64,000 nucleotides of DNA from contig NW_018404536.1 of assembly GCF_002113885.1 (NCBI RefSeq), positions 142,705-206,704 on the forward strand, given 5' to 3'. The notes under the pieces were generated by a model. That model saw nothing but the letters and a program-made list of their open reading frames with translations, searched no databases and was not told the origin of the DNA. Positions within the stretch are counted from its first letter, which is position 1, and every line of letters begins with the position of its first letter. Position numbers and translations under genes: made by a program. This DNA comes from Mizuhopecten yessoensis (Eukaryota). Of the stretch, positions 1,061 to 60,397 are shown piece by piece.

Positions 1061-1902
1061 TATGTGTGTATCTGGTTATACATGTACGGTGGGAATATAA
1101 ATTGTTTCTAAATAGTACTACAGTACACCCACAATTCCCCTAGTGGGGTCTCTCCGGCCCTAGTACGTAACAATCTGTGAAGTCCCATTGAGGGAGTTTT
1201 AAGCTGCCTTTTAATGGTTAAATTTCCTAATTTTTATGGCTGTCACAATAAAATGGAAAACCGGCATATTGCAATACACCAGTATATCATAATGTGTGCC
1301 AAACAGAAATGGAATATCGCTGTATCAAAACATTTTTCAAAGGCTTATTTTTATGCATTTTTTATAATGTATCAGCTATGCATTTTACTTTGCAAAATAC
1401 TAGATATTCTAACAGATATCCTTATACCCATAAGTAGGCTATTGCTAGCGGTGAGAATCGGTTGTTCCATGATCAGTAGTTAGTTTAATGAAAACCTTAA
1501 AGATGATATACAATTCTGTTGATAACATTCAAACAACAATTTCCTTTTGAACTGGGCACTTTATTCCTATGAGAGTATTTCGGTGCATGTATTGCAATGG
1601 ATTCCCTCTGTTGCAATATATCGTGATACACTCCAGGTGTATCATTGCATCCCTACAATTATTTTTTTACTGTAAATTATTATTTGGTTAAAATCAATCA
1701 AGCTGCTCTTCAGAAGTAGTCTTTTGAAGGTAAACATCCATCAATTCCCTGTATTTGGTCCTGTCCCTGAGACAGCCCCCAGGGGACAAAACTCTTCCTT
1801 TATACAACATTAGATGTTCTGGTTCCAAAGATGTATCATTGTGAATTTGGTTAAAATCCAATCAGAAGCTTATGAGGTTTACGTTTTATACTAAATACTT
1901 AC

Positions 1903-3906
1903 TCTGACATAGGGATCAGGCATCTTGGACCGCAGATCTCTCATTCTCAGATCTCGACATTTGATGACCTTCACCAGAAGGAGACTGCGTTTGAAATCAT
2001 ATTTGAAGGAAAGTTGAATTTCTCCTCTGACGTCCTCCGTTACTTTCATCATAGTTGGATCCAAAGTCTTGTATAACCCTTTCAGTAACTGGGTGTTTTT
2101 CTGGAGAATGATAGTCATACAATAATGTAACATTCGTCAATTCTAAAACTTACTGATTGAAAAAAAATTACATTCAATATTAGACTTGAACATTGAATAA
2201 ATTATCAGTAAATAGGTACCAAGGTACCTGAGAAATGCCGAGGAGTATGGTGTTCTGTATATTAAAAGTCACCAGCAATTACCCAGCAATGTAGTGTATA
2301 ACAGTAGAACACTGTTTCTGTCACTTTGATAAATTAGTAACTGGCCTTCAATATCATACTACATTTTTTTTAAATTAACTTTATATGAAAATTCCGAAAT
2401 AGGTTTGGTTAAAATAATGTAATGACATTTTAGTTGTTTTATGTTTATACACAAAAAAAAGGTAATTCAATCAATAAAGTCAATTAATTATTATTTACAA
2501 AATATTGTGAATCTAGGGTTTAGAGTATTGGGAAGGGGAGGTAAAGGGTGCAAAGTTCATTTCAAAAAAATCCTCTTTTTTATTTAAACAAGAGGCCCAA
2601 TGGGCCTGCATCGCTCACCTGGTATAAAGCTCACACTTGTAACCTTAAAAGTGATCTAAAATAAAGCTACAGGCAAAATATCAGTATTTATTATTAAAAT
2701 TCATTCAAAAGACCCTGTTATTTTTTTTTAAAACATTTCACCCCTGTGATTGAAAGTCGAACAAAGTCATTATGTTGAACAAATTTTATAGCCTTTCATC
2801 TCAGGATGCAACTTGCAAAGTATCAACATCCTGGGACCCATGGTTATTCAGAAGAGGTCATTTAAAGATTTTAAACAAATTTGACCCCTGTGACATTGAA
2901 TATAACTCAAAGTCATTCACTTTAACAAACATAGTAGTCCTTGATCCCAGCATGCTACTGACTAAATATCAACATCCTGAGCCTTTTGGTTATTCAGAAC
3001 AAGTTGTTTAAATATTTTGAACATATTTGCTCCTTGTGACCTTGCATATGATTCAAGGTCATACATTTAAACAAACTGGGTAGCCCTTGATCCTAGTATG
3101 CTACTGACTAAATATCATCACCCTGGGCATTTTGGTTATTCAGAAGAAGTTGTTAAAAGTTTTTAACATATTTTATGCATGTGACCTTGAATATGGGTGA
3201 AGGTCATTTATTCGAACAAACTTTGTAGCCCTTTATCTCAGCATGCTACTGGCCAAATATCATTACCCTGGGCATTTTGGTTATTGATAAGAAGTTGTTT
3301 AAAGTTTTTAACATATTTGACCACTGTGACCTTGAATATGGGTGAAGGTCATTCATTTGAACAAACTTTGTAGCCCTTCATCTCAGCATGCTACTGGCCA
3401 AATATCATATCCCTGGGCAGTTTGGTTATCGAGAAGAAGATGTTTAAAGTTTTTAACATATTTGACCCCTGTGACCTTGAAAATGGGTGAAGGTCATTAA
3501 TTTTAACAAACTTTGTAGCCCTTCATCCCAGTTTGCTTTTGACCAAATATCGACACCCTAGGCCTTTCGGTTATTAAGAAGAAGTCGTGCCAGGTGAGCT
3601 AAAAAACTTAATTTATTTAGAAATGATCTTTTTATAATTTTCAATGTATTGTCCTTTATTGTTATCATTTTTTTTATCATTATCATAAACAAGAAGTAAG
3701 CCTAATGTAGTAATGTAGATATGTGGTTTACACCGAGTGCCTACCATGTTCTCGTCGTGTTTGTCCCAGCCTTTCACAGCAACAACTTGGTTGTGATCTG
3801 CCTTTGCTGTCATCAAACGTGATAACCCATAGATTTTCTGTGGATTTTGCCGAACTCGGCCCTCTTCCACATCTTTTGATGAGGAGTGTGACTGATTTCC
3901 ACCCAT
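1903..3906 (-). CDS. C2-domain (synaptotagmin-like) protein, partial: first two coding exons; gene continues toward or past the left window edge
   Basis: Exons 3906-3745 (MGGNQSHSSS...DENM, donor gtaggc) and 2100-1903 (acceptor ttctccag, KNTQ...GEIQLSFKYDFKRSLLLVKVIKCRDLRMRDLRSKMPDPYVR, donor gtaagt) join in phase 0. GEIQLS-Y...L-VKVI-C-DL...DPYV is the start of a synaptotagmin-type C2A domain. A possible next acceptor lies at 3-5. Confidence 0.8.
2586..3605 (-). mobile_element. Non-autonomous Helentron-type (HINE/DINE-1-like) element with an internal ~145-147 bp tandem array
   Basis: Ends are AACAAGAGGCCCAATGGGCCT...GCTCACCTGG and CCAGGTGAGCTAAAA (sub-TIR plus 3' stem-loop). About 5-6 tandem units (GACCTTGAATATGGGTGAAGGTCA recurs at 3183, 3328, 3473). 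Same family as 45379-46683. Confidence 0.8.
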
Positions 3907-5098
3907 CTTTTTTTGATAATGCAAACCTGTAACATAAAAAGGAACACAACATCAATGTACAATATATTCATCTAGCGGGTCAGGAGCCTGTTTGTTTGAC
4001 TTACAAATATTCAATTCTTTTGGAAGTTTTGATTGGATCTGGTAATCCCATATGAAGCATTTTCTAAACAGATTAAAACCAGATCCTGATTTAATGATTC
4101 TCTGGTATATTACAGTAAGCATATATATATATATACATAACAGGTCAAAGATCCATAAAAATGTCAGTTTCTGTACATGACATACCTACAGGTATTGATT
4201 ATTTAAATAATTGTGATTTTGAACATACATGAGTACTATTTAACATTAATATTCATCTGTCCCTGACTGCAGATGATTATACCGGTACCTGCTTACAGGC
4301 ACAAATAATCTCAATGTTATGTTTTTTCCCCAATCAGATTATATACCCTTTTTACTACTGTACTTATCAAAGTTTAATTTCCGTTTGAGAAGATGATAAG
4401 CTATTACATGCTTTGTTTTTTACAAGTATGTTGGCCATATATAGGTTATAAGCTTTAGACTTTATAAGGGTCTTTATTTCAAGGATAGCAAAGTGTTAAA
4501 ACTAAACTATGGAATAATGTCAGACAAGCTATTTTACTAATCTGGCCGTCAAAGTTGGTCAGCCTAGGTCATTTTGTCAGATGGAAGTGGGTCAAGGTCA
4601 TGCATTTGAACAAAATCAACAGCCCTTAATCCGAAAATGCTGTTGGACAAATATCATCAAACAAATTGACGGAAGAACAAGGCAGCTACATATATATATA
4701 CAGTCCCTCTCTACTTCATATTCAGTTATCAAAACCGAATATCAAATCATCATTTAAAATACCTAAAAATATATAACGAAAAATGTATACAATGGATCTG
4801 AATAACATTGTAAGGTGATTTTTGTAATTTCTTCAATCATCTTGCTTCCCCCTATAAAAAAAAAAATGAAAAAAAATGACTTACAATACAGTACATAGTA
4901 CCTGCCCGAGCTGAGTATTAAATTGATCCTATGCCTTGAAATGGAGCAAGCCTGGTGTGAATCACACCAGGGTGATTTTAGCAATAATTGACTGCACGTG
5001 GGTCCGCATTAATACACTGGTTTGTAATTAATATAAATTATTTCTGTTGATCTCCTATATAACATGACGTTCAGCTCTGTCTAAAATGTCATTGAATT

Positions 5099-51396: not shown

Positions 51397-51492
51397 AAAT
51401 TATCAGTGATTAAGCTACAAAACATCAGAAAATCTTTACTTCCATAGAAGTTTACAAGATTTTCGTCATACTGTTGTTTCACTAACAACTTT
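51397..51492 (-). promoter_or_regulatory. SECIS element (type II) of SELENOK
   Basis: Minus-strand RNA: AUGA-C-GAAAAUCUU-GUAA-ACUUC(UAUG)GAAGU-A-AAGAUUUUC-UGAU. AUGA/GA kink-turn core (51469-51466, 51427-51424), 9-bp helix II, conserved AA(A) at 51453-51451, apical mini-helix, and a lower helix AAGUUGUUAGUGA/UCACUGAUAAUUU. AATAAA pair downstream at 51096-51084. Confidence 0.92.
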
Positions 51493-51713
51493 GTAGTCTT
51501 AGCACTCGCCACATCAAGTTACAAGGAGTAGAATAGATCAGGATTTTAATATTACTGCAGATATTTTCTTCTGTTAGCCAGAGTTTATATGGATGCCCAG
51601 CACCTTCTGAAACTCTGCCTAAACTTTTATAAACAGTATATAAAATTAAATTAAATGAGCATCAGAGATGTCCTGAAGGTCCTCGAGGATATGCGTATAT
51701 GTTCTGCTGAGGT

Positions 51714-52270
51714 CCTGTTAGATGTCCTTCCGTAGGTTTGTAAGATGTCCTCCTGTAGGTTTGTGAGATGTCCTCCTGTAGGTTGGTGAGATGTCCTCCT
51801 GTAGGTTTGTGAGATGTCCTCCTGCAGGTGTGTGAAATGTCCTCCTGCAGGTTTGTGAGATGTCCTGTAGGTTTGTGAGATGTCCTCCTGTAGGTTTGTG
51901 AGATGTCCTTCTGTAGGTTTGTGAGATGTCCTTCTGTAGGTTTGTGAGATGTCCTCCTGTAGGTTTGTGAGATGTCCTTCTGTAGGTTTGTGAAATGTCC
52001 TCCTGTAGGTTTGTGAGATGTCCTCCTGTAGGTTTGTGAGATGTCCTTCTGCAGGTTTGTGAAATGTCCTCCAGCAGGTTTGTGAAATGTCCTCCTGTAG
52101 GTTTGTGAGATGTCCTCCTGCAGGTTTGTGAGATGTCCTTCCACAGGTTTGTGAAATGTCCTCCTGTAGGTTTGTGAGATGTCCTTCCACAGGTTTGTGA
52201 GATGTCCTCCTGTAGGTTTGTGAGATGTCCTCCTGTACTTTGTGAGATGTCCTCCTGTAGGTTTGTTAAA
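51714..52270. repeat. 23-bp minisatellite, about 24 copies, in the SELENOK 3' region
   Basis: Unit GTAGGTTTGTGAGATGTCCTCCT. Its reverse complement has no stop codon, which explains the spurious ORFs 51651-52190 and 51662-52144. Confidence 0.95.
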
Positions 52271-52383
52271 TGTCTAGGATTTTGAAGATATTTGTGTGAA
52301 GGTTCTTCGGGGTATCTGGGAGATTTCCTCCTGGATTTCTGTAAGTTTCGGTATCTACTCAGTATAACTTAATGTGTGGATTT

Positions 52384-52430
52384 ACACTCGACTATGGTCT
52401 CCCATAAAGGGAATCAACACAGCCGAGTGT
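52384..52430 (-). promoter_or_regulatory. Stem-loop immediately after the SELENOK stop (SRE/proximal stem-loop-like)
   Basis: ACACUCGGCUGUG-UUGA-UUCCC(UUUAU)GGGAG-AC-CAUAGUCGAGUGU: 13-bp lower stem with two G-U pairs, starting 9 nt after the Sec UGA. Confidence 0.7.
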
Positions 52431-55400
52431 TTACCTTCCTCATCCTCCGCCACCCATTGGTGGGGCACTAGGTCCTCCTAAAATGATAGATGCAGTAACA
52501 TGCATTAAATGTAATCCAATAAATAGTTGTATACATAGTATACATGGTTTATTTTACCGTATAATTTAATGCTGTTAATTATGTGATTATAATAGCCATA
52601 ACAATACAAAAGACAATGCTTACAAGATACTGTTGTACAAACTTTTTTAAGTTAACATACTTAAAAGTTGAACTTTTCATTTCATTGTTGATTTTTTGAT
52701 AAACAAAATGTACAAGTCCTGGGATTTTTAATGACGCCCAAGATAAAAAAATATTTTTTTTATAATTTTCTGTATATGTTTTTCAGAAATTCTAAATTTA
52801 ATGATGTAAAGTTCATGCAATCAGAAGATTTCTCTTTGTGTAGGTAACTTGAACGTGAGGTGGAATTGTCGACATAAACTTACCTCCACCGCCTCTAAAT
52901 CCACCCATTCTTCTCCTTGGAGGGGGTGGGGGCCTGAAGAAAACATGCATCAAGGTCATTTGATCACTTGAAATACATATTTAACATACATGTATTTACA
53001 ATTTATAACATGCTGTGGGTTACGTATTTAAAAGAAAGAAATGTACAGAAGTAACAAATATAAACCATCAATTAAGAAACAGTCAAATTTAAAAAGAGGA
53101 ATATTATTAAAGTATAGAGGTGGTACTCCTTATTCCCCTGTTCACTTCTATTTTACTACATGTACATTACTGTACTGGTAATATAAAATATTCACAAAAG
53201 ACTTGAGTACATGTAAATATACAGTGTATATGATTATAATAAGGAATGACTAACAAACTAAATAATAAAAGTATTACTACTGAACATGAACAGCCAGTAA
53301 TTGAGAAGTTTAAAACATACTATGGGCCATTACCCAGTTTTCAACTATTACAATGAGCCAGTTTCTATATATAAATCTACATGAAATCTTCCTAAATTTA
53401 ACAGGTCATTCCTATCTTGAATGCAAACATGGAAACCGTCCTTCTTTATCCCTGGTTAATGTTTGTGCACCTCAGTGTTCATTATACACACACTTGATTA
53501 TGTGTTATAACATTTCTTCTAGAAATACTGGTGCAATACTAGCCACTCACCCCTGTCCTGATCGGTAGTCGGTCACGTGAGAGTTACCTTTCTTTGTCAT
53601 ACTGGGCTGTAAATTAAGTATTATATATATATGTAAATATATTGGAAAACTATAACAGTAAAATTCAGTGGTACCGAGTCAGAGTGACATAAACACATAA
53701 CATGAAAGATCTGTATAATAATCAAGCAGATTTACATTTACATGACACCGGGTTGGTTTTCTTTAGAACTACATTGTTTGATACATGAAGTATTCCGTCT
53801 TTGCGTATTGCAGAGTTACATGTATCTTCTCTTGTGAGCAGGTATTGATTGTTACGTCATTTGTTTGTGTGAGAAAATTACATCGTTTTCTCAAAAATTG
53901 ATGACGTTACTCTCACAAACAAATGACGTAACAATCAATACCTGCTCACAAGAGAAATAACTCTGCAATATGCAAAGATGGAATAGAGCTTTACATTAAT
54001 TTTCATTAATTAAATTCGCCTTTTGTAAGATATATGTTGGATAAACAACTATGAACATGTACACAATAATTTGATTTTATCAATTTATGTGTTCTATCAT
54101 CTGTAGTTTTAATATATATCATGAAGGATCAACTAAGAGTATATGGTATATAATCTACAGTCTTTTTTTCAACACACGGACATGTATTATAATCTGTGTC
54201 TTTAAAAAGCTTTTAAGCGTATGAATATACTTACTGACACCAAAGTCTGGAAGCTGAAAAAAAATATGAAGCATGTTGGATCATTGAAAAATAAACTGGT
54301 AACCTGTTAGCATTAGAATAGATAATATATATATATATAACACCACATAGTGGAGTTGTACCACCATTGCCATTCGCAAGTTTTTATATGTTTATAGTTA
54401 TAGACTTTTTAAATTTCCAGGGATTATCAAGAGATCATGGATGTTTTGTGGTGAAAAAAAATACATTGTTCAACATTTTAGTACTTACAATAGTACAATG
54501 AAATTAATTAGTCCCCAAAACATTTCTGGAATGTAGGACAGTCTCCATGGTGACTGTGAGTCGACCACATTCCCTGTAACAAAAAGTCATATTTTGAAAT
54601 TAAAATCTACACAGGAATTCATATATATTTATTGTGTTACATGTTCACAACACTAGTATATATATGTACATATGTAGTCAAGCATGGTATGCACATCAGT
54701 TTACTAATCACTGCTCTACCAGGTGAAATATGGAAATTCATTTAAGCCGAGTTTGTATTCACCACTGTAACTGTTACATATATACCTTCTCATGGAAAGA
54801 ACCATTCATTTGAGTAAATAACTTAATACAATCTATACAATGTTTGAGGAATTAGATTATCGTTCAAAGTGCACAATTCCTTTCATTGGTGCAAATTAAA
54901 TGATGTCTCTGATATAAGGAGTCTGAGGTCATTTCTCAAGCACCAAAATTAAGGGCTTAAAGCTGAATCTATAAAATACAAGTGACAAGTCCAATACTTT
55001 ACCAACTAATATCAATTACAAGGAAAGTCTTTCTTGGTTCACCCCTGCGACAATGTAATTATCAATCATCTTAACTGAGATTGCATTTCTTACTTTCAGT
55101 TTATATAGCACTCTATGTATGCTGCCACTTTTGTTAATTTAATAAGTGTATCTGCAATATGTCTGACGCTTGGTAGTCCACTTCAAATAACATTTTACAC
55201 AGTTTTAAATAATTTCTTCAGGTGCAAAAAAGTTTCGTGATTATAGGAACTCAGAAATAATTAAGAAACATTCCTCTGTTCCTGTGAATTATGATCTATT
55301 AAATTATAATTCTACACTCCATTAGATCGGTCACTGGTATTATAGGCTACTAACCCGAGTTTCCTCTGGCCCCACACTAGCTGCAATAACATAGCCTCTG

Positions 55401-56311
55401 ATGATAGGACTTTTTTTATATATATATTGCCAGGTCCAGTACACTCTGCCGATTGAGCTATATATAATATATATAACTGATCTATCTGAAATAGGACTTT
55501 TGAGCTATTTTCATGTGATTTTCTTTTTAAGGAAAACTTAACAAATTTGCTTTTAAAAGAAGATTTTATCATTAGGTTGATAACAAAAGACATTAAATAT
55601 AAGTTTTCTTTTTTAAGAATATTGTAAAAAAGTCGCAAATTTTGCATTTATGAAAAATGATTTTTTTTTTATAAATGTATGCTTTTTGTAGTCAACATTA
55701 CCATCAACATTGTTTTATGCGACTTTGTTTCAATTTAATGGAAATTTGAGTGTACTGGACCTGATTGCGTCAGACTCAGAGGCCGGATATTAATATTAGT
55801 ACTAGCCAACACACCAGCCATCTATCTGTCAAAATGTCTAAGTCTGGTGTCAAGGCCAGATGAAACTCAGTTTACATAGGCTAACAAGCTAGAAATAAGA
55901 CCATAACGTCTACTTAGTGTTTTTCCATCCATTTCCAGCTATTTTTAGAATGTGAAATGATCACAGATCTCGAAGGTTCGCTTTCAATTTCATTACAGAA
56001 AAAATATAAAGATATCTAGTCATTCTGAAAATGTATCGATACAAAGAAATTTACACGTTTGCCAAGTATACTATTTGCTTTGGTTAACTGTTTGATATGA
56101 AAGAAAATGATGAAGAAATAAATGAGGTCGTCGTGGACCGGAAGGGTAAACATTCACTGTTTTATCTGCATACAGTGTACAATGACGATAATTTGGTATA
56201 TCTTACAATTACAATAGTTGACATACTCAAACTGTGACAGATGTTTCGCCCTTATATCAGAGATTTCACTGACATAAAGTATTTTCACTTACCTTGTGAC
56301 ACGTAAACCAT
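52431..56311 (-). CDS. SELENOK: Selenoprotein K, 91 aa, Sec at residue 89 (TGA at 52442-52440)
   Basis: Exons 56311-56293, 54573-54489, 54253-54235, 53606-53551, 52933-52884, 52477-52431 (276 nt, all GT-AG) give MVYVSQGNVVDSQSPWRLSYIPEMFWGLINFIVLFFQTLVSPSMTKKGNSHVTDYRSGQGPPPPPRRRMGGFRGGGGGPSAPPMGGGGUGR*. This matches the SelK signature MVY-S-G...SPWRLS...FWG...FF-TL...GGUGR, and a SECIS is present. Confidence 0.96.
53791..53985. mobile_element. Fold-back MITE in SELENOK intron 3
   Basis: TATTCCGTCTTTGCGTATTGCAGAGTTA...TCTCTTGTGAGCAGGTATTGATTGTTACGTCATTTGTTTGTG pairs with its reverse complement ending GCAAAGATGGAATA. Confidence 0.85.
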
Positions 56312-56923: not shown

Positions 56924-57463
56924 CACGAACGCATTATTTAGCTGTAACAAATTGCCAGGTCCCTGTGGTTCATTCCTCCATTTCAGACACAGTCGCAAAA
57001 CCTTTGAGGTCGTATAGATTCTAACCCAGTCTCGCGTCTTTGCATACCCCACTTCTGCTGATTAATGTAGTATATGTGGCTGGAGATGATATTTCAGCAT
57101 TTTTTTTATACATAAAACATATAATATCAGGTATATACTAGCCCGAGTTTTCAGACTTAAACATTTTGACAGATAGATGTCCACACCTGACATCTATATA
57201 TACCGTCACTATACTCAAATCGGGACAGTACCGAAAACGGGACACTTATGGGAGAACGGCCCAATAAACTGTCATTCAAAGCAAAGAAGTACATTATGTA
57301 TACAGTTTTCATTTCATGATACCTTTCTGATAACTTAACTGTATGTAAGCTTTAATGGCTGCTGATTGTCGATGCATGGACAATTTGAAGGTAAGAATAA
57401 TGACCAAAACAAAACTTTCCCGATTTACGTGCCGTGCGATTTACGTGTCATGTCTGAAGTCTG

Positions 57464-57730
57464 GGCCCGTATTCATAAAACCGTTCTCGTGCTCAAGCAT
57501 GGTTTCTGTGCTCAAACCAACTTTCTTTTAACTCGCTTAAATCATGTCAAATGATCAAAAAGTCAAAAATAAACATTGAAAACAGTTTTCGTCTTTAAGT
57601 CTCTTCAACGTTTTCCCAAACCATTGCCAAAATAAGATTTACTTATTAATGCATAGCCTTAACAAGAAATTCGGCTTGAGCACAAAATCCATGGTTCTTC
57701 AGCATGAGAACGGTTTCATGAATACGGGCC
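57464..57730. mobile_element. Harbinger-like MITE
   Basis: CTG|GGCCCGTATTCATAAAACCGTTCTC...GAGAACGGTTTCATGAATACGGGCC|CTG; 3-bp TSD and long TIRs. Confidence 0.85.
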
Positions 57731-57961
57731 CTGGTCACTGTGTAAGGGCCAGAGGAAACTCGGGCTACTGCCCATACATATACGGTATAATTTTAATTTT
57801 CAATTAATTACTGAAATTGTATGAAATATGCTGTATAATATACACATATTATGTGCATGTACTCGTGGTCATCGATAACATTCCGTGGTGTCACAATTCA
57901 GTTTACAGTCCTTTGCTATATATATATATATATATACAATAAAAACATTTTTTTCAGATCG

Positions 57962-58002
57962 TCCGCTAGGCCTTTCTGCCTTCTAGGGCTTCTTCAGGCG
58001 GA
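57962..58002 (-). ncRNA. Minimal type I hammerhead ribozyme motif (Penelope/retrozyme-like), imperfect
   Basis: UCCGC-CUGAAGA-AGCC(CUAGAA)GGCA-GAAA-GGCC-UA^GCGGA: 5-bp stem I, palindromic loopless stem III AGGCCU, CUA cleavage triplet, and an A-A mismatch at the base of stem II. Confidence 0.6.
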
Positions 58003-58064
58003 TACATATATATAATAAAAAGGGATTAAATGTCCATGCGAAGGAAGTAAATATAGAAAAAATA

Positions 58065-58133
58065 AGATTACCGACCGACTAAACCTGAAGAGCCCTGTGA
58101 AGGGTGAAAGCAGCTAGTTTTATAGTCGGTCGT

Positions 58134-58139
<6 letters not shown>
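58065..58139 (+). ncRNA. Minimal type I hammerhead ribozyme motif with extended stem I
   Basis: AGAUUACCGACCGACUAAAC-CUGAAGA-GCCCU(GUGA)AGGGU-GAAA-GC(A)GC-UA^GUUUUAUAGUCGGUCGUUAAUCU. All core nucleotides are present; predicted cut after 58116. Confidence 0.75.
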
Positions 58140-58177
<38 letters not shown>

Positions 58178-58304
58178 NNNNNNNNNNNNNNNNNNNNNNN
58201 NNNNNNNNNNNNNNNNNNNNNNNNNNNNNNNNNNNNNNNNNNNNNNNNNNNNNNNNNNNNNNNNNNNNNNNNNNNNNNNNNNNNNNNNNNNNNNNNNNNN
58301 NNNN

Positions 58305-58360
<56 letters not shown>
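58137..58360. repeat. (CT)n microsatellite spanning an assembly gap (N 58178-58304)
   Basis: Read directly from the sequence. Confidence 0.98.
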
Positions 58361-58374
<14 letters not shown>

Positions 58375-60397
58375 ATTATATGGGGCAAAGAAGTAATTCC
58401 AACAGTGTGGACAAGTTTAGGTTGTCAAGATCTCCATCCCATATACTATTTTAAGTAATTCGTATCCTACGGACATACCTCCATTAGGATCCAGTGTTAT
58501 ATGGGATTTTGGATTTTACCGTCTATATTACTTCTTTGACCCATATATAATATGGAATATCATGTTCTATAAATAACACATTTTTATCTATTAATAAATT
58601 TGAGAGAAAAAATGAAAATAAAGTGTAAGGGGGATGAGATTGGGATTGTTATTGGCAGCCAACCAATTAAATATGCACGATCGTAACCTCGTGCATGTGT
58701 AGATTTAATTGGTTTGTTTCTCCTCATCCCATATATAATCAGCTTCCCATGAAAAACACATCTTCGACAGCATAATTAATCGAGTCATTTATCAAATTTC
58801 ATTTATTTGTCTAAAAGATCTATTTTTGTATAAATTTTAAAAAAGGAGATAAGAAACTTACAAAACTTAAATATTATATCCATAAACAGCTTGCATTAAA
58901 GCTATCTTCCAGAAATAAGATTGCAGAGCATTGCAATTTTCTCTTTGTCAATATCTCCATCTTGACATTTACCTGCAATAAATCAAAAGTGAACACCTCA
59001 CTAGTAAACCCTATAATCTTAACGACTTTATTTTTAAGAAAAATTTACTTTCTCCTTCTCGGTAGTAACAGAACGGCCTCCCCGGTTTATGAAGTTTATA
59101 CAGATATACCAAAGTAATGCATTACCAAACAACCTGTTCGGTATCAGGACAGTTTAAACAAAGGCGTGTTGTGTGTGGCCAATAATGATATGGTTTCTGA
59201 CTATATATAGCATGTCTCAGTGTCTGCCATGTTCACTGTACTTTAGGTCTTTGGTGGGTTCGTTTCGCTTACAGAACGTATTTTTGTCTTTCCATGTTTT
59301 CCGAGGTTCCTCCAAAGCCGATGTGAGATGATAACTCTTTAACTACCAAACATGCAGCAAAGCTTTGTTTGCAAAATCTTAACACAAAGACATAGCTTTT
59401 AGCGTAAATGGCTCACCCAATAAAATTGGCCGCCGAATGTATTAAATTATTTGTTTTGTATTCTTCTTTTGATTATTTTCTGAAATGATTTCTCTTTCCT
59501 AATTTTGTTTTCTTTTGACTTTTATATTCCAAATGAAATACCTTTTTTGTAAAGGTGCTGCAAATTTATATTTTGAAAAAAGGTCTTTCTGTGCTTTTTT
59601 AAAAATGGCGGATCTAAAGGTTGTGGGGTTAACGTGCAAGGAGTCAGGGGTCCCTTTAGCCTTTGATCTTTTGACCAATGGGAATCCCCCATTCACTCTG
59701 AAGCAGGGTCTCACAGGGGAAAACCTAACTGTGGGGTCCCCAAAGGAATATTTTTAAGTGAAAAAACAAATTGTCCAAAAACATCGTATTTTATTATACT
59801 TTTTATTTTTACCCTCCCGGTGGCGCATGATTTCGTCATATGCATTCTTTGTCATATGGATGGGTGTTATACAGTATAAATATGTAATTTCGTCACGTGT
59901 TTGGCTTACGTCATAGAAAGCAATTTGAATAAACTTGTTAAAGATGTTAACATAGTTCTTAATATTTGATGGTTATTTTAGACTTTACATTGACAAACTG
60001 GAAAATAATATTTTGGCCGAAAGGAAAGTTCTACAACACAAACAATTTCTGGTGAACATATTCTTTTATTCCACATTTCTCTCAAATTATCAAATAAATT
60101 TACACAATGTAACAATAAGTAAATATTTTACCCAGCTGTAAGACACTTATAACGTCATAATGAATTATTATATTAGCATACCAGTCTCGAGGATCCATGT
60201 TACTGGAGCAGGCAACTTTGAGAGAGATTGAAACAGATCTAGTCATGCATCTCTTTGGAAATACAAATACATTGTATTTGAAATAGATTAATAAAAATGT
60301 CTCTTCGGCAAATTCACTGTGGCACAATATTATTCAACAACAATGAGAAGCACACGTTTAGGACGTGGACGGATGGCACTCCGCTCTTGAGGTATTC

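What the first reader, a model, noticed from the sequence alone, without database searches (positions are those of the whole stretch)
57962..58139. Back-to-back pair of minimal hammerhead ribozyme motifs between microsatellites
Seen: a plus-strand motif at 58065-58139 with the complete core (CUGAAGA, stem II GCCCU/AGGGU, GAAA, 3-bp stem III with a 1-nt loop, CUA cut site) and a ~20-bp bulged stem I. A minus-strand motif lies 62 nt to its left at 58002-57962, with a palindromic loopless stem III (AGGCCU) and one A-A mismatch. They point away from each other, have different helix sequences, and are bracketed by (TA)n and (CT)n tracts. Known: minimal type I hammerheads with very short or palindromic stem III occur in Penelope-like element repeats and metazoan retrozymes, and are thought to cleave as dimers. 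Inference: remnant of a non-autonomous PLE/retrozyme unit able to self-cleave in both polarities, about 1.7 kb upstream of SELENOK.
Basis: partly seen in the sequence, partly recalled or inferred. Interest (0 to 1): 0.78.

Follow-up and report, generated by a model that had tools for sequence, protein, structure and literature searches.

The report
Penelope-like retrotransposon tails with minimal hammerheads
The two hammerhead ribozyme motifs are real, but they are ordinary cargo of three broken, recently inserted 3' ends from two Penelope-like retrotransposon families that each have hundreds of copies in this genome, not one element that cuts itself on both strands.

Summary
Both motifs are in the sequence exactly as described and are far beyond chance. 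They are not one unit.

- **Minus-strand motif (HH2):** an exact copy of a 486-copy ribozyme. It lies about 150 nt after the stop codon of one Penelope-like element (PLE) family.
- **Plus-strand motif (HH1):** belongs to a second PLE family with about 700 copies. [quoted passage not shown]

Window 57937-58380 holds three 5'-truncated insertions. One is a family-2 tail on the minus strand. The other two are family-1 tails joined head to head, which is the usual PLE layout: an inverted truncated copy, a 39-nt extension on one side only, and (TA)n target sites.

The striking ~20-bp "stem I" of HH1 is a by-product of that inverted junction. Full-length copies have a 4-bp stem I, plus 2 more pairs beyond a U-U mismatch. 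The flanking (TA)n and (CT)n tracts are the elements' own tails.

Neither motif reaches an Rfam hammerhead threshold. RNA-seq reads cover them at low depth on both strands, with no ends piled at the predicted cut sites.

Minimal, dimer-type hammerheads in PLEs are published (Cervera and de la Pena 2014; Craig et al. 2021). The scan noted the same kind elsewhere in this genome (s1-512523, s1-545962).

One side result: family-1 5' ends cluster inside the ribozyme, not at the scissile bond.

The parts
57917..57936 (.). (TA)n tract at the 3' end of the family-2 copy. It is the target or tail microsatellite.
   Evidence: Read. All family copies end in (TA)n. (TA)n is a published preferred PLE target (PMC8557442).
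57937..58002 (-). 5'-truncated 3' end of PLE family 2: the HH2 ribozyme plus the short tail form, without the tail extension.
   Evidence: Same sequence as L009:1381-1450, which follows the stop codon of a GIY-YIG ORF. The 36-nt ribozyme is an exact match to the commonest of 486 genomic copies.
57962..58002 (-). HH2 minimal hammerhead. Stem I is 5 bp, stem II is 3 bp plus an A-A pair, helix III is the palindrome AGGCCU, and the predicted cut is between 57967 and 57966.
   Evidence: RNAcofold gives the dimeric hammerhead secondary structure as the minimum-energy dimer, -30.7 kcal/mol against -20.0 for two monomers.
58003..58084 (-). 5'-truncated 3' end of PLE family 1 (left copy). On the minus strand it starts within 4 nt of the position just after the HH1 cut site. 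It then runs through the 39-nt tail extension (58013-58051) to a short (TA) tail (58003-58012).
   Evidence: BLAST of the pieces against 30 family loci, 95-100% identity. Aligned copies. A tail extension on one side only is described in PMC8557442.
58081..58139 (+). 5'-truncated 3' end of PLE family 1 (right copy), head to head with the left copy. It holds the complete HH1 core with the predicted cut after 58116. The junction with the left copy lies in a 4-nt overlap (58081-58084) that fits either copy.
   Evidence: The 22 nt before the cut are an exact match to the family's main form (place C1209:200799-200820).
58065..58139 (+). The 5' strand of the long stem I (58065-58083) is the inverted left copy, not part of the ribozyme of the parent element.
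   Evidence: Inverted arms. In full-length copies the 5' flank is different and pairs over only 4 (+2) bp.
58138..58380 (+). (CT)n, an assembly gap (58179-58305, left unfilled), (CT)n, then (TA)n. Inferred to be the expanded 3' tail of the right family-1 copy.
   Evidence: Other copies show the same tail growing short (CT)n runs before the terminal (TA)n (L005 minus-strand copy and L006 plus-strand copy). Continuity across the gap cannot be shown.

Best explanation
Window 57937-58380 is a small pile-up of dead-on-arrival 3' ends of two related Penelope-like retrotransposon families. [quoted passage not shown]

Each family carries its own minimal type I hammerhead in the 3' untranslated region, about 50-90 nt from the element's end. 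One family-2 tail (minus strand) brings HH2. Two family-1 tails, inserted head to head, bring HH1 on the plus strand and create its artificial long stem I.

Shown here:
- family membership of both motifs
- linkage of each ribozyme to an RT/GIY-YIG ORF in other copies
- copy numbers
- the head-to-head rule
- the one-sided tail extension
- the (TA)n ends

Inferred from published work on this class: in a transcript or RNA pair holding two ribozyme copies, the palindromic helix III pairs between copies. The resulting dimeric hammerhead cuts after the CUA triplet and trims element RNA.

Inferred for this locus: the fragments have no ORF, and each strand holds a single ribozyme. Self-cleavage here is therefore unlikely to matter. 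The motifs are inherited cargo rather than a local function.
For: **Repeat status and layout**
- Window 57940-58140 has at least 1411 first-look candidates in the 987.6-Mb genome.
- Where family-1 and family-2 tails are adjacent in other loci, the order on one strand is HH1, then the tail, then HH2.

**Link to autonomous elements**
- HH1: in L062 a 794-aa ORF (1693-4077) scores RVT_1 35.1 bits (cut-off 29.6) and GIY-YIG 24.2 bits (cut-off 22.6). The HH1 core starts at 4188, about 110 nt after the stop.
- GIY-YIG is also found in L054 and L055.
- HH2: in L009 a 391-aa ORF ends at 1232, and HH2 is at 1381-1421. This protein is 54% identical to the family-1 protein over 390 aa.

**Whole-genome pattern counts (reversed-pattern controls gave 0-1)**
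- 718 copies of the 22 nt just before the HH1 cut
- 636 copies of the 22 nt just after it
- 660 copies starting at +7
- 329 copies with the 5' arm and core start
- 253 copies at the ORF end
- 486 copies of the 36-nt HH2

**Head-to-head rule**
- Among the first 100 places listed, 14 of 17 neighbouring pairs are on opposite strands. All 14 are in minus-then-plus order, as in the window.

**Agreement with the literature**
- PLE features match PMC8557442: 5' truncation, an adjacent inverted truncated copy, a 30-40-bp tail at one end, (TA)n targets, and a hammerhead near the 3' end.
- PLE features match PMC4209133: minimal hammerheads with a short helix I, a palindromic helix III, and pairs 100-700 bp apart on opposite strands.

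**Comparison of the ribozymes**
- HH2 and a third family's ribozyme (in L004) share the core and the stem II loop. Their stem II pairs differ. Helix III is AGGCCU in one and AGUACU in the other, and both are palindromes.
Against: **Nothing here shows catalysis**
- Neither motif reaches an Rfam gathering score: 22.6 bits in the window and 16.9 bits for a full-length copy, against 52. HH2 gives no hit.
- The usually conserved G10.1-C11.1 pair is G-U in HH1 and A-A in HH2.
- For HH1 the catalytically competent dimer fold is predicted at -18.0 kcal/mol. An alternative duplex that buries the cut site is at -30.7.
- In four raw RNA-seq runs no read ends pile up at either predicted cut site.

**Gaps in the reconstruction**
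- Continuity of the right-hand copy through the assembly gap is inferred.
- The PLE clade (Neptune-like or other) was not placed by phylogeny.
Confidence: 0.9

Rival explanations
1. One reading: a single non-autonomous PLE-dependent or retrozyme unit that self-cleaves in both polarities.
For: Two complete cores on opposite strands within 180 nt. Short copies made of HH2 plus its tail dominate family 2: only 114 of 486 copies keep the family's own upstream sequence. Some copies could therefore behave as non-autonomous units.
Against: The two motifs belong to different families, each linked to its own ORF. Where the tails are adjacent in other loci, the ribozymes share one strand. Their helix III sequences cannot pair with each other. 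Neighbouring copies are head to head, not direct tandems. Reads showed only opposite-strand joints and no back-joints.
Confidence: 0.04
2. A domesticated ribozyme or hairpin acting on SELENOK expression, for example by processing an upstream transcript or giving a small-RNA precursor.
For: It lies about 1.6-2 kb from the 5' side of SELENOK, which is on the minus strand (note s1-561950). The HH1 hairpin is very stable (-32.6 kcal/mol). There is a weak MIR2118 hit at 24.4 bits, E = 0.17.
Against: The copies are identical or nearly identical to the main forms of their families, so they look recent and unselected. The MIR2118 hit is far below its gathering score of 85 and rests on the (CT)n tract. 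The hairpin is explained by the inverted insertion.
Confidence: 0.03
3. Chance resemblance to the hammerhead core inside an unrelated inverted repeat.
For: The Rfam scores are sub-threshold.
Against: 0.01 hits are expected per window against 2 found. Hundreds of copies exist with zero reversed-pattern controls. The position in the 3' UTR of RT/GIY-YIG elements is where such ribozymes are published.
Confidence: 0.01

Closest known systems
Minimal hammerhead ribozymes of metazoan Penelope-like elements (Cervera and de la Pena 2014, PMC4209133; Lunse et al. 2017, cited in PMC6765202)
   Same: - Type I topology
- CUGANGA and GAAA core
- Short helix I (4-5 bp) with no defined loop 1
- No stable helix III as a monomer, but a palindromic 15.1-16.1 segment fit for dimers
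- Location beside the RT/GIY-YIG ORF
- Most genomic copies are single motifs in truncated elements
- Pairs occur 100-700 bp apart on opposite strands
   Different: The published consensus keeps a G10.1-C11.1 pair, plus an extra nucleotide after position 9. Here the base of stem II reads G-U (HH1) or A-A (HH2). HH1 has a 1-nt interruption in its palindrome. Activity was not tested.
EN+ Penelope-like elements with C-terminal GIY-YIG (Penelope/Poseidon, Neptune, Nematis; Craig et al. 2021, PMC8557442)
   Same: - One ORF with RT then GIY-YIG
- A cysteine motif (C-x4-C-x2-C) in the linker before the endonuclease, seen
- Heavy 5' truncation
- An inverted truncated copy at the 5' side
- A 39-nt tail on one side only
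- (TA)n ends
- A hammerhead near the 3' end
   Different: The clade was not determined. The window itself holds only 3' fragments with no ORF.
Metazoan non-LTR retrozymes (Cervera and de la Pena 2020, PMC7229834)
   Same: Type I hammerheads in AT-rich repeats of invertebrates. They are probably mobilised by PLEs.
   Different: Retrozymes are direct tandem repeats of about 150-450 bp. They carry canonical hammerheads with loop-loop contacts and give abundant circular RNAs. Here the copies are head to head, the ribozymes are the minimal kind, and no circular joints were seen.

Membership tests
Hammerhead ribozyme (minimal type I, PLE kind) | Conserved core CUGANGA ... GAAA, with a non-G nucleotide at the cut site | tested here: met
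   Both motifs have it. The cut triplet is CUA in both.
Hammerhead ribozyme (minimal type I, PLE kind) | Helices I and II flank the core, with a G10.1-C11.1 pair at the base of helix II | tested here: inconclusive
   The helices are present: HH1 stem II is 5 bp, HH2 stem II is 3 bp, and HH2 stem I is 5 bp. Position 10.1-11.1 is G-U in HH1 and A-A in HH2.
Hammerhead ribozyme (minimal type I, PLE kind) | A palindromic helix III segment that allows dimer formation | tested here: met
   AGGCCU in HH2 and AGC-A-GCU in HH1. Cofolding gives the hammerhead-type dimer as the minimum for HH2 but not for HH1.
Hammerhead ribozyme (minimal type I, PLE kind) | Reaches the curated score of an Rfam hammerhead model | tested here: not met
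   HH9 scores 22.6 bits in the window and 16.9 bits in L062, against a gathering score of 52. HH2 gives no hit. Rfam models expect a closed helix III, which this class lacks.
Hammerhead ribozyme (minimal type I, PLE kind) | Self-cleavage at the predicted bond | tested here: inconclusive
   No pile-up of read ends at L009 1416|1417 (HH2) or 1520|1521 (HH1) in four raw RNA-seq runs, at depth up to about 70 per strand. Standard libraries and multi-copy mapping make this a weak test. No bench test was possible.
Penelope-like element (EN+) | A single ORF with reverse transcriptase followed by a GIY-YIG endonuclease | tested here: met
   In L062 the ORF scores RVT_1 35.1 bits and GIY-YIG 24.2 bits, both above the Pfam cut-offs. 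This is not present in the window itself, which holds only 3' fragments.
Penelope-like element (EN+) | Insertion architecture: 5' truncation, an adjacent inverted copy, a one-sided 30-40-bp tail, and a microsatellite target | tested here: met
   with the counts. The tail extension is at window 58013-58051 on the left copy only.
Metazoan non-LTR retrozyme | Direct tandem repeats of 150-450 bp, each with a canonical type I hammerhead, expressed as circular RNA | tested here: not met
   14 of 17 neighbouring pairs are head to head. Only opposite-strand joints appear in the reads, with no back-joints. The ribozymes are the minimal kind.

The most novel reading that the evidence does not exclude
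The ribozyme may be more than a cutter. It may be a structural landmark for PLE reverse transcription.

In family 1, about 390 of about 720 copies have their 5' end or inversion point inside a roughly 29-nt stretch of the ribozyme's 5' half. Many of these are perfect palindromes centred on the stem II loop. None pile up at the scissile bond.

In family 2, about three quarters of the 486 ribozyme copies lack the family's upstream sequence. In the five short copies I could read, the 5' end lies within a few nt of stem I.

This would fit two ideas. One is that the stem II hairpin is a template-switch hotspot that makes the head-to-head copies typical of PLEs. The other is that 'ribozyme plus tail' is the smallest unit that can be mobilised.
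Probability: 0.3. Interest if true: 0.45.

Novelty: new member of a known kind. Interest (0 to 1): 0.18.

Why it matters
The finding turns an apparently special double-polarity ribozyme unit next to a selenoprotein gene into an ordinary transposon scar, so it needs no follow-up as a local regulatory element.

It also adds two points for the wider scan:
- Long "stem I" helices around minimal hammerheads in animal genomes can be artefacts of head-to-head PLE insertions.
- (TA)n and (CT)n tracts beside such motifs can be the elements' own tails.

The 5'-end profile may interest people working on how PLEs make inverted copies. Ends are about 20 times denser per nucleotide inside the ribozyme than in the 115 nt upstream, and there is no excess at the cut site.

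Tried and rejected
- **Rfam scans.** I scanned the window region and two full-length loci. Only sub-threshold HH9 hits appeared for HH1, and nothing for HH2.
- **RNA cut at the ribozyme as the template.** If so, family-1 copies should start at the cut site. This is rejected: the counts are flat across the cut, at 718, 636 and 660 copies.
- **Retrozyme-style tandem arrays or circular RNA.** Rejected.
- **Read ends at the cut sites.** I looked in four raw RNA-seq runs and found none. The ends reported at L009 1414 and 1422 coincide with variable positions between copies, not with the bond at 1416|1417.
- **The MIR2118 and mir-297 hits near the site.** They rest on the (CT)n and (TA)n tracts and were dismissed.
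- **Window 57500-57961.** It is not part of the family. Positions 57500-57735 belong to an unrelated MITE, and 57740-57916 is unique.
- **Pfam on short ORF pieces of L028.** This gave nothing. Longer ORFs were needed.
- **Lunse et al. 2017 (PMC5785218).** The paper is not held, so it is cited only through PMC6765202.
- **More genomic loci.** The 5'-end profile therefore rests on whole-genome pattern counts, not on aligned copies.
- **Large protein searches.** Not used, because Pfam already settled the ORF. For the same reason the species and the PLE clade were not determined.
- **Assembly gap.** Its letters were neither filled nor looked up.

Full report

On the plus strand the core CUGAAGA is at 58085-58091. 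A 5-bp stem II closed by a G-U pair is at 58092-58105. GAAA is at 58106-58109, followed by a 3-bp helix III with a 1-nt loop, and the CUA cut triplet ends at 58116. The arms at 58065-58081 and 58123-58139 are 94% complementary.

On the minus strand (58002 down to 57962) there is a 5-bp stem I, the same core, a 3-bp stem II with an A-A pair at its base, GAAA, the palindrome AGGCCU, and a cut site between 57967 and 57966.

A minimal-hammerhead descriptor I wrote finds just these two hits in the window, against 0.01 expected per 64 kb in Markov simulations. Rfam gives only a sub-threshold Hammerhead_HH9 match to the plus motif (22.6 bits, gathering score 52) and nothing for the minus motif.

**The region is a repeat.** The stretch 57940-58140 has at least 1411 first-look candidates in the window's own genome, which is 987.6 Mb in 82,659 contigs. 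I mapped the three pieces (minus motif, spacer, plus motif) onto 30 fetched loci.

- The usual order on one strand is HH1, then the reverse complement of the window's spacer, then a (TA)n run.
- In some loci HH2 then follows on the same strand.
- The window's arrangement, with HH1 turned the other way, is a head-to-head junction.
- Positions 58003-58084 are a family-1 tail on the minus strand. It starts within 4 nt of the nucleotide just after the HH1 cut site.
- Positions 58081-58139 are a second family-1 copy on the plus strand.
- The "5' strand of stem I" at 58065-58083 is therefore the inverted copy of the very segment that forms the 3' strand. In copies that extend upstream, the flank is different and pairs with the 3' strand over only 4 bp, plus 2 more after a U-U mismatch.

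**Link to autonomous elements.**

- Following longer family-1 copies upstream leads to a 794-aa ORF in L062. It scores RVT_1 35.1 bits and GIY-YIG 24.2 bits, both above the Pfam cut-offs. Its stop codon lies about 110 nt before the HH1 core.
- The GIY-YIG end of the ORF is also seen in L054 and L055.
- The 306 nt spanning the ORF end and 3' UTR recur at 96-98% identity in at least 40 scored places.
- HH2 lies about 150 nt after the stop codon of a second ORF in L009. That protein is 54% identical to the first over 390 aa and carries the same cysteine motif before the endonuclease.
- A third ribozyme with the same design sits in a third tail family in L004, L012, L025 and L029. It has the same core and the same stem II loop as HH2, different stem II pairs, and the palindrome AGUACU in place of AGGCCU.

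**Fit to the published architecture.** Craig et al. 2021 (PMC8557442) describe the following PLE features:
- heavy 5' truncation
- an inverted 5'-truncated copy next to the insertion
- a 30-40-bp tail often present at only one end
- (TA)n as a preferred target
- a hammerhead near the 3' end

All five are seen here. In head-to-head pairs one copy carries a 39-nt extension before its (TA)n and the other does not. In the window the extension is at 58013-58051, on the left copy only. Among the first 100 places listed for the ribozyme's 3' half, 14 of 17 neighbouring pairs are on opposite strands, and all 14 are in minus-then-plus order.

The (TA)n at 57917-57936 ends the family-2 copy. The (CT)n after 58138 resembles the short (CT)n runs that other copies grow inside the same tail, so I read it as the right copy's tail. 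Continuity across the gap cannot be shown. The gap was not filled.

Cervera and de la Pena 2014 (PMC4209133) describe the matching ribozyme class. It has a short helix I, no stable helix III, and palindromic positions around 15.2-16.2. Most motifs are single copies in truncated elements, and some pairs lie 100-700 bp apart on opposite strands. In vitro activity is low even as dimers.

**Copy numbers and 5' ends.** Whole-genome pattern counts (22-nt probes with up to 2 mismatches; reversed-pattern controls gave 0-1) give this profile for family 1:

| Probe position | Copies |
|---|---|
| End of the ORF | 253 |
| 5' arm plus core start | 329 |
| 22 nt just before the cut | 718 |
| 22 nt just after the cut | 636 |
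| Starting at +7 | 660 |

There is no excess of 5' ends at the scissile bond. This argues against ribozyme-cut RNA being the usual template.

About 390 copies end or invert within roughly 29 nt of the ribozyme's 5' half. That is about 13 ends per nt, against about 0.7 per nt in the 115 nt upstream. Several fetched copies are perfect palindromes centred on the stem II loop (L013-L017).

For family 2, the 36-nt ribozyme has 486 copies with up to 3 mismatches, and the window's copy is exact. Only 114 of these keep the family's own sequence just upstream. The short copies that I could read start 0-4 nt before stem I.

**Function.** Nothing here shows catalysis.

- Cofolding predicts the hammerhead-type dimer as the minimum-energy state for HH2: an intermolecular AGGCCU helix, stem I formed in trans, and stem II within each strand. 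The energy is -30.7 kcal/mol, against -20.0 for two monomers.
- For HH1 the competent dimer is at -18.0 kcal/mol. A rival duplex that buries G12-A14 and the cut site is at -30.7.
- I laid raw reads of four RNA-seq runs of the same species label on L009:1100-1660. Both ribozymes are covered on both strands at depth up to about 70. No ends pile up at 1416|1417 or 1520|1521. The only joints are opposite-strand ones that mirror genomic head-to-head junctions.
- This is a weak test, because the libraries are standard and the reads come from many copies.
- In the window each strand carries one ribozyme, and the helix III sequences of HH1 and HH2 cannot pair with each other. The dimer route is therefore not available in cis.

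**Verdict.** It is wrong on the main point of interest, a single unit cutting in both polarities with an evolved long stem I.

This is an ordinary instance of a published kind. The scan's notes s1-512523 and s1-545962 report the same kind elsewhere in this genome. The only mildly new element is the clustering of 5' ends and inversion centres inside the ribozyme.

SELENOK is on the minus strand. A Sec-containing C-terminus lies near 52451, and the gene span in note s1-561950 is 51397-56311. The pile-up therefore lies about 1.6-2 kb beyond the gene's 5' side. Nothing suggests it acts on the gene.

Noticed in passing
window 58381-58543: A 163-bp MITE with roughly 16-21-nt terminal inverted repeats (95% complementary) sits between TA runs. 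The same element lies next to PLE copies through a (TA)n run in L008, L010, L026 and L062. (TA)n tracts therefore look like shared landing sites for several element types.
   Followed up: partly
window 57463-57731: A MITE-like repeat with 35-nt terminal inverted repeats (91% complementary). It has at least 3477 first-look candidates in the genome at 85-92% identity and is unrelated to the ribozyme families.
   Followed up: partly
L004:1193-1234 (minus strand); also L012, L025, L029: A third minimal hammerhead family. It has the same core and the same stem II loop as HH2, different stem II pairs, and helix III AGUACU. Its tail is built like the other two. Its stem I and its autonomous partner were not determined.
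   Followed up: partly
window 58013-58051; L009:1455-1490; L004 tail: The one-sided tail extensions of the three families differ in sequence, but each holds a small TCC...GGA hairpin in a similar position. Its meaning is unknown.
   Followed up: no
L013-L017 (G000:C1444 near 882600; C5544 near 396250; C2474 near 1269100): Perfect palindromes made of two family-1 tails joined inside the ribozyme's stem II. Flanks identical on both sides in L013-L016 suggest long inverted duplications or assembly foldbacks. RNA reads show the same kind of joint.
   Followed up: partly
L028:1-1154 (minus strand): A family-1-like RT ORF runs straight into a family-1 tail that starts just after the ribozyme cut site (L028 near 37-67). 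This looks like an internally deleted copy.
   Followed up: no
window about 52451 (minus strand): A reading frame ends with a glycine run, an in-frame TGA, then GR and a stop. This fits the SELENOK C-terminus and places the gene on the minus strand.
   Followed up: partly
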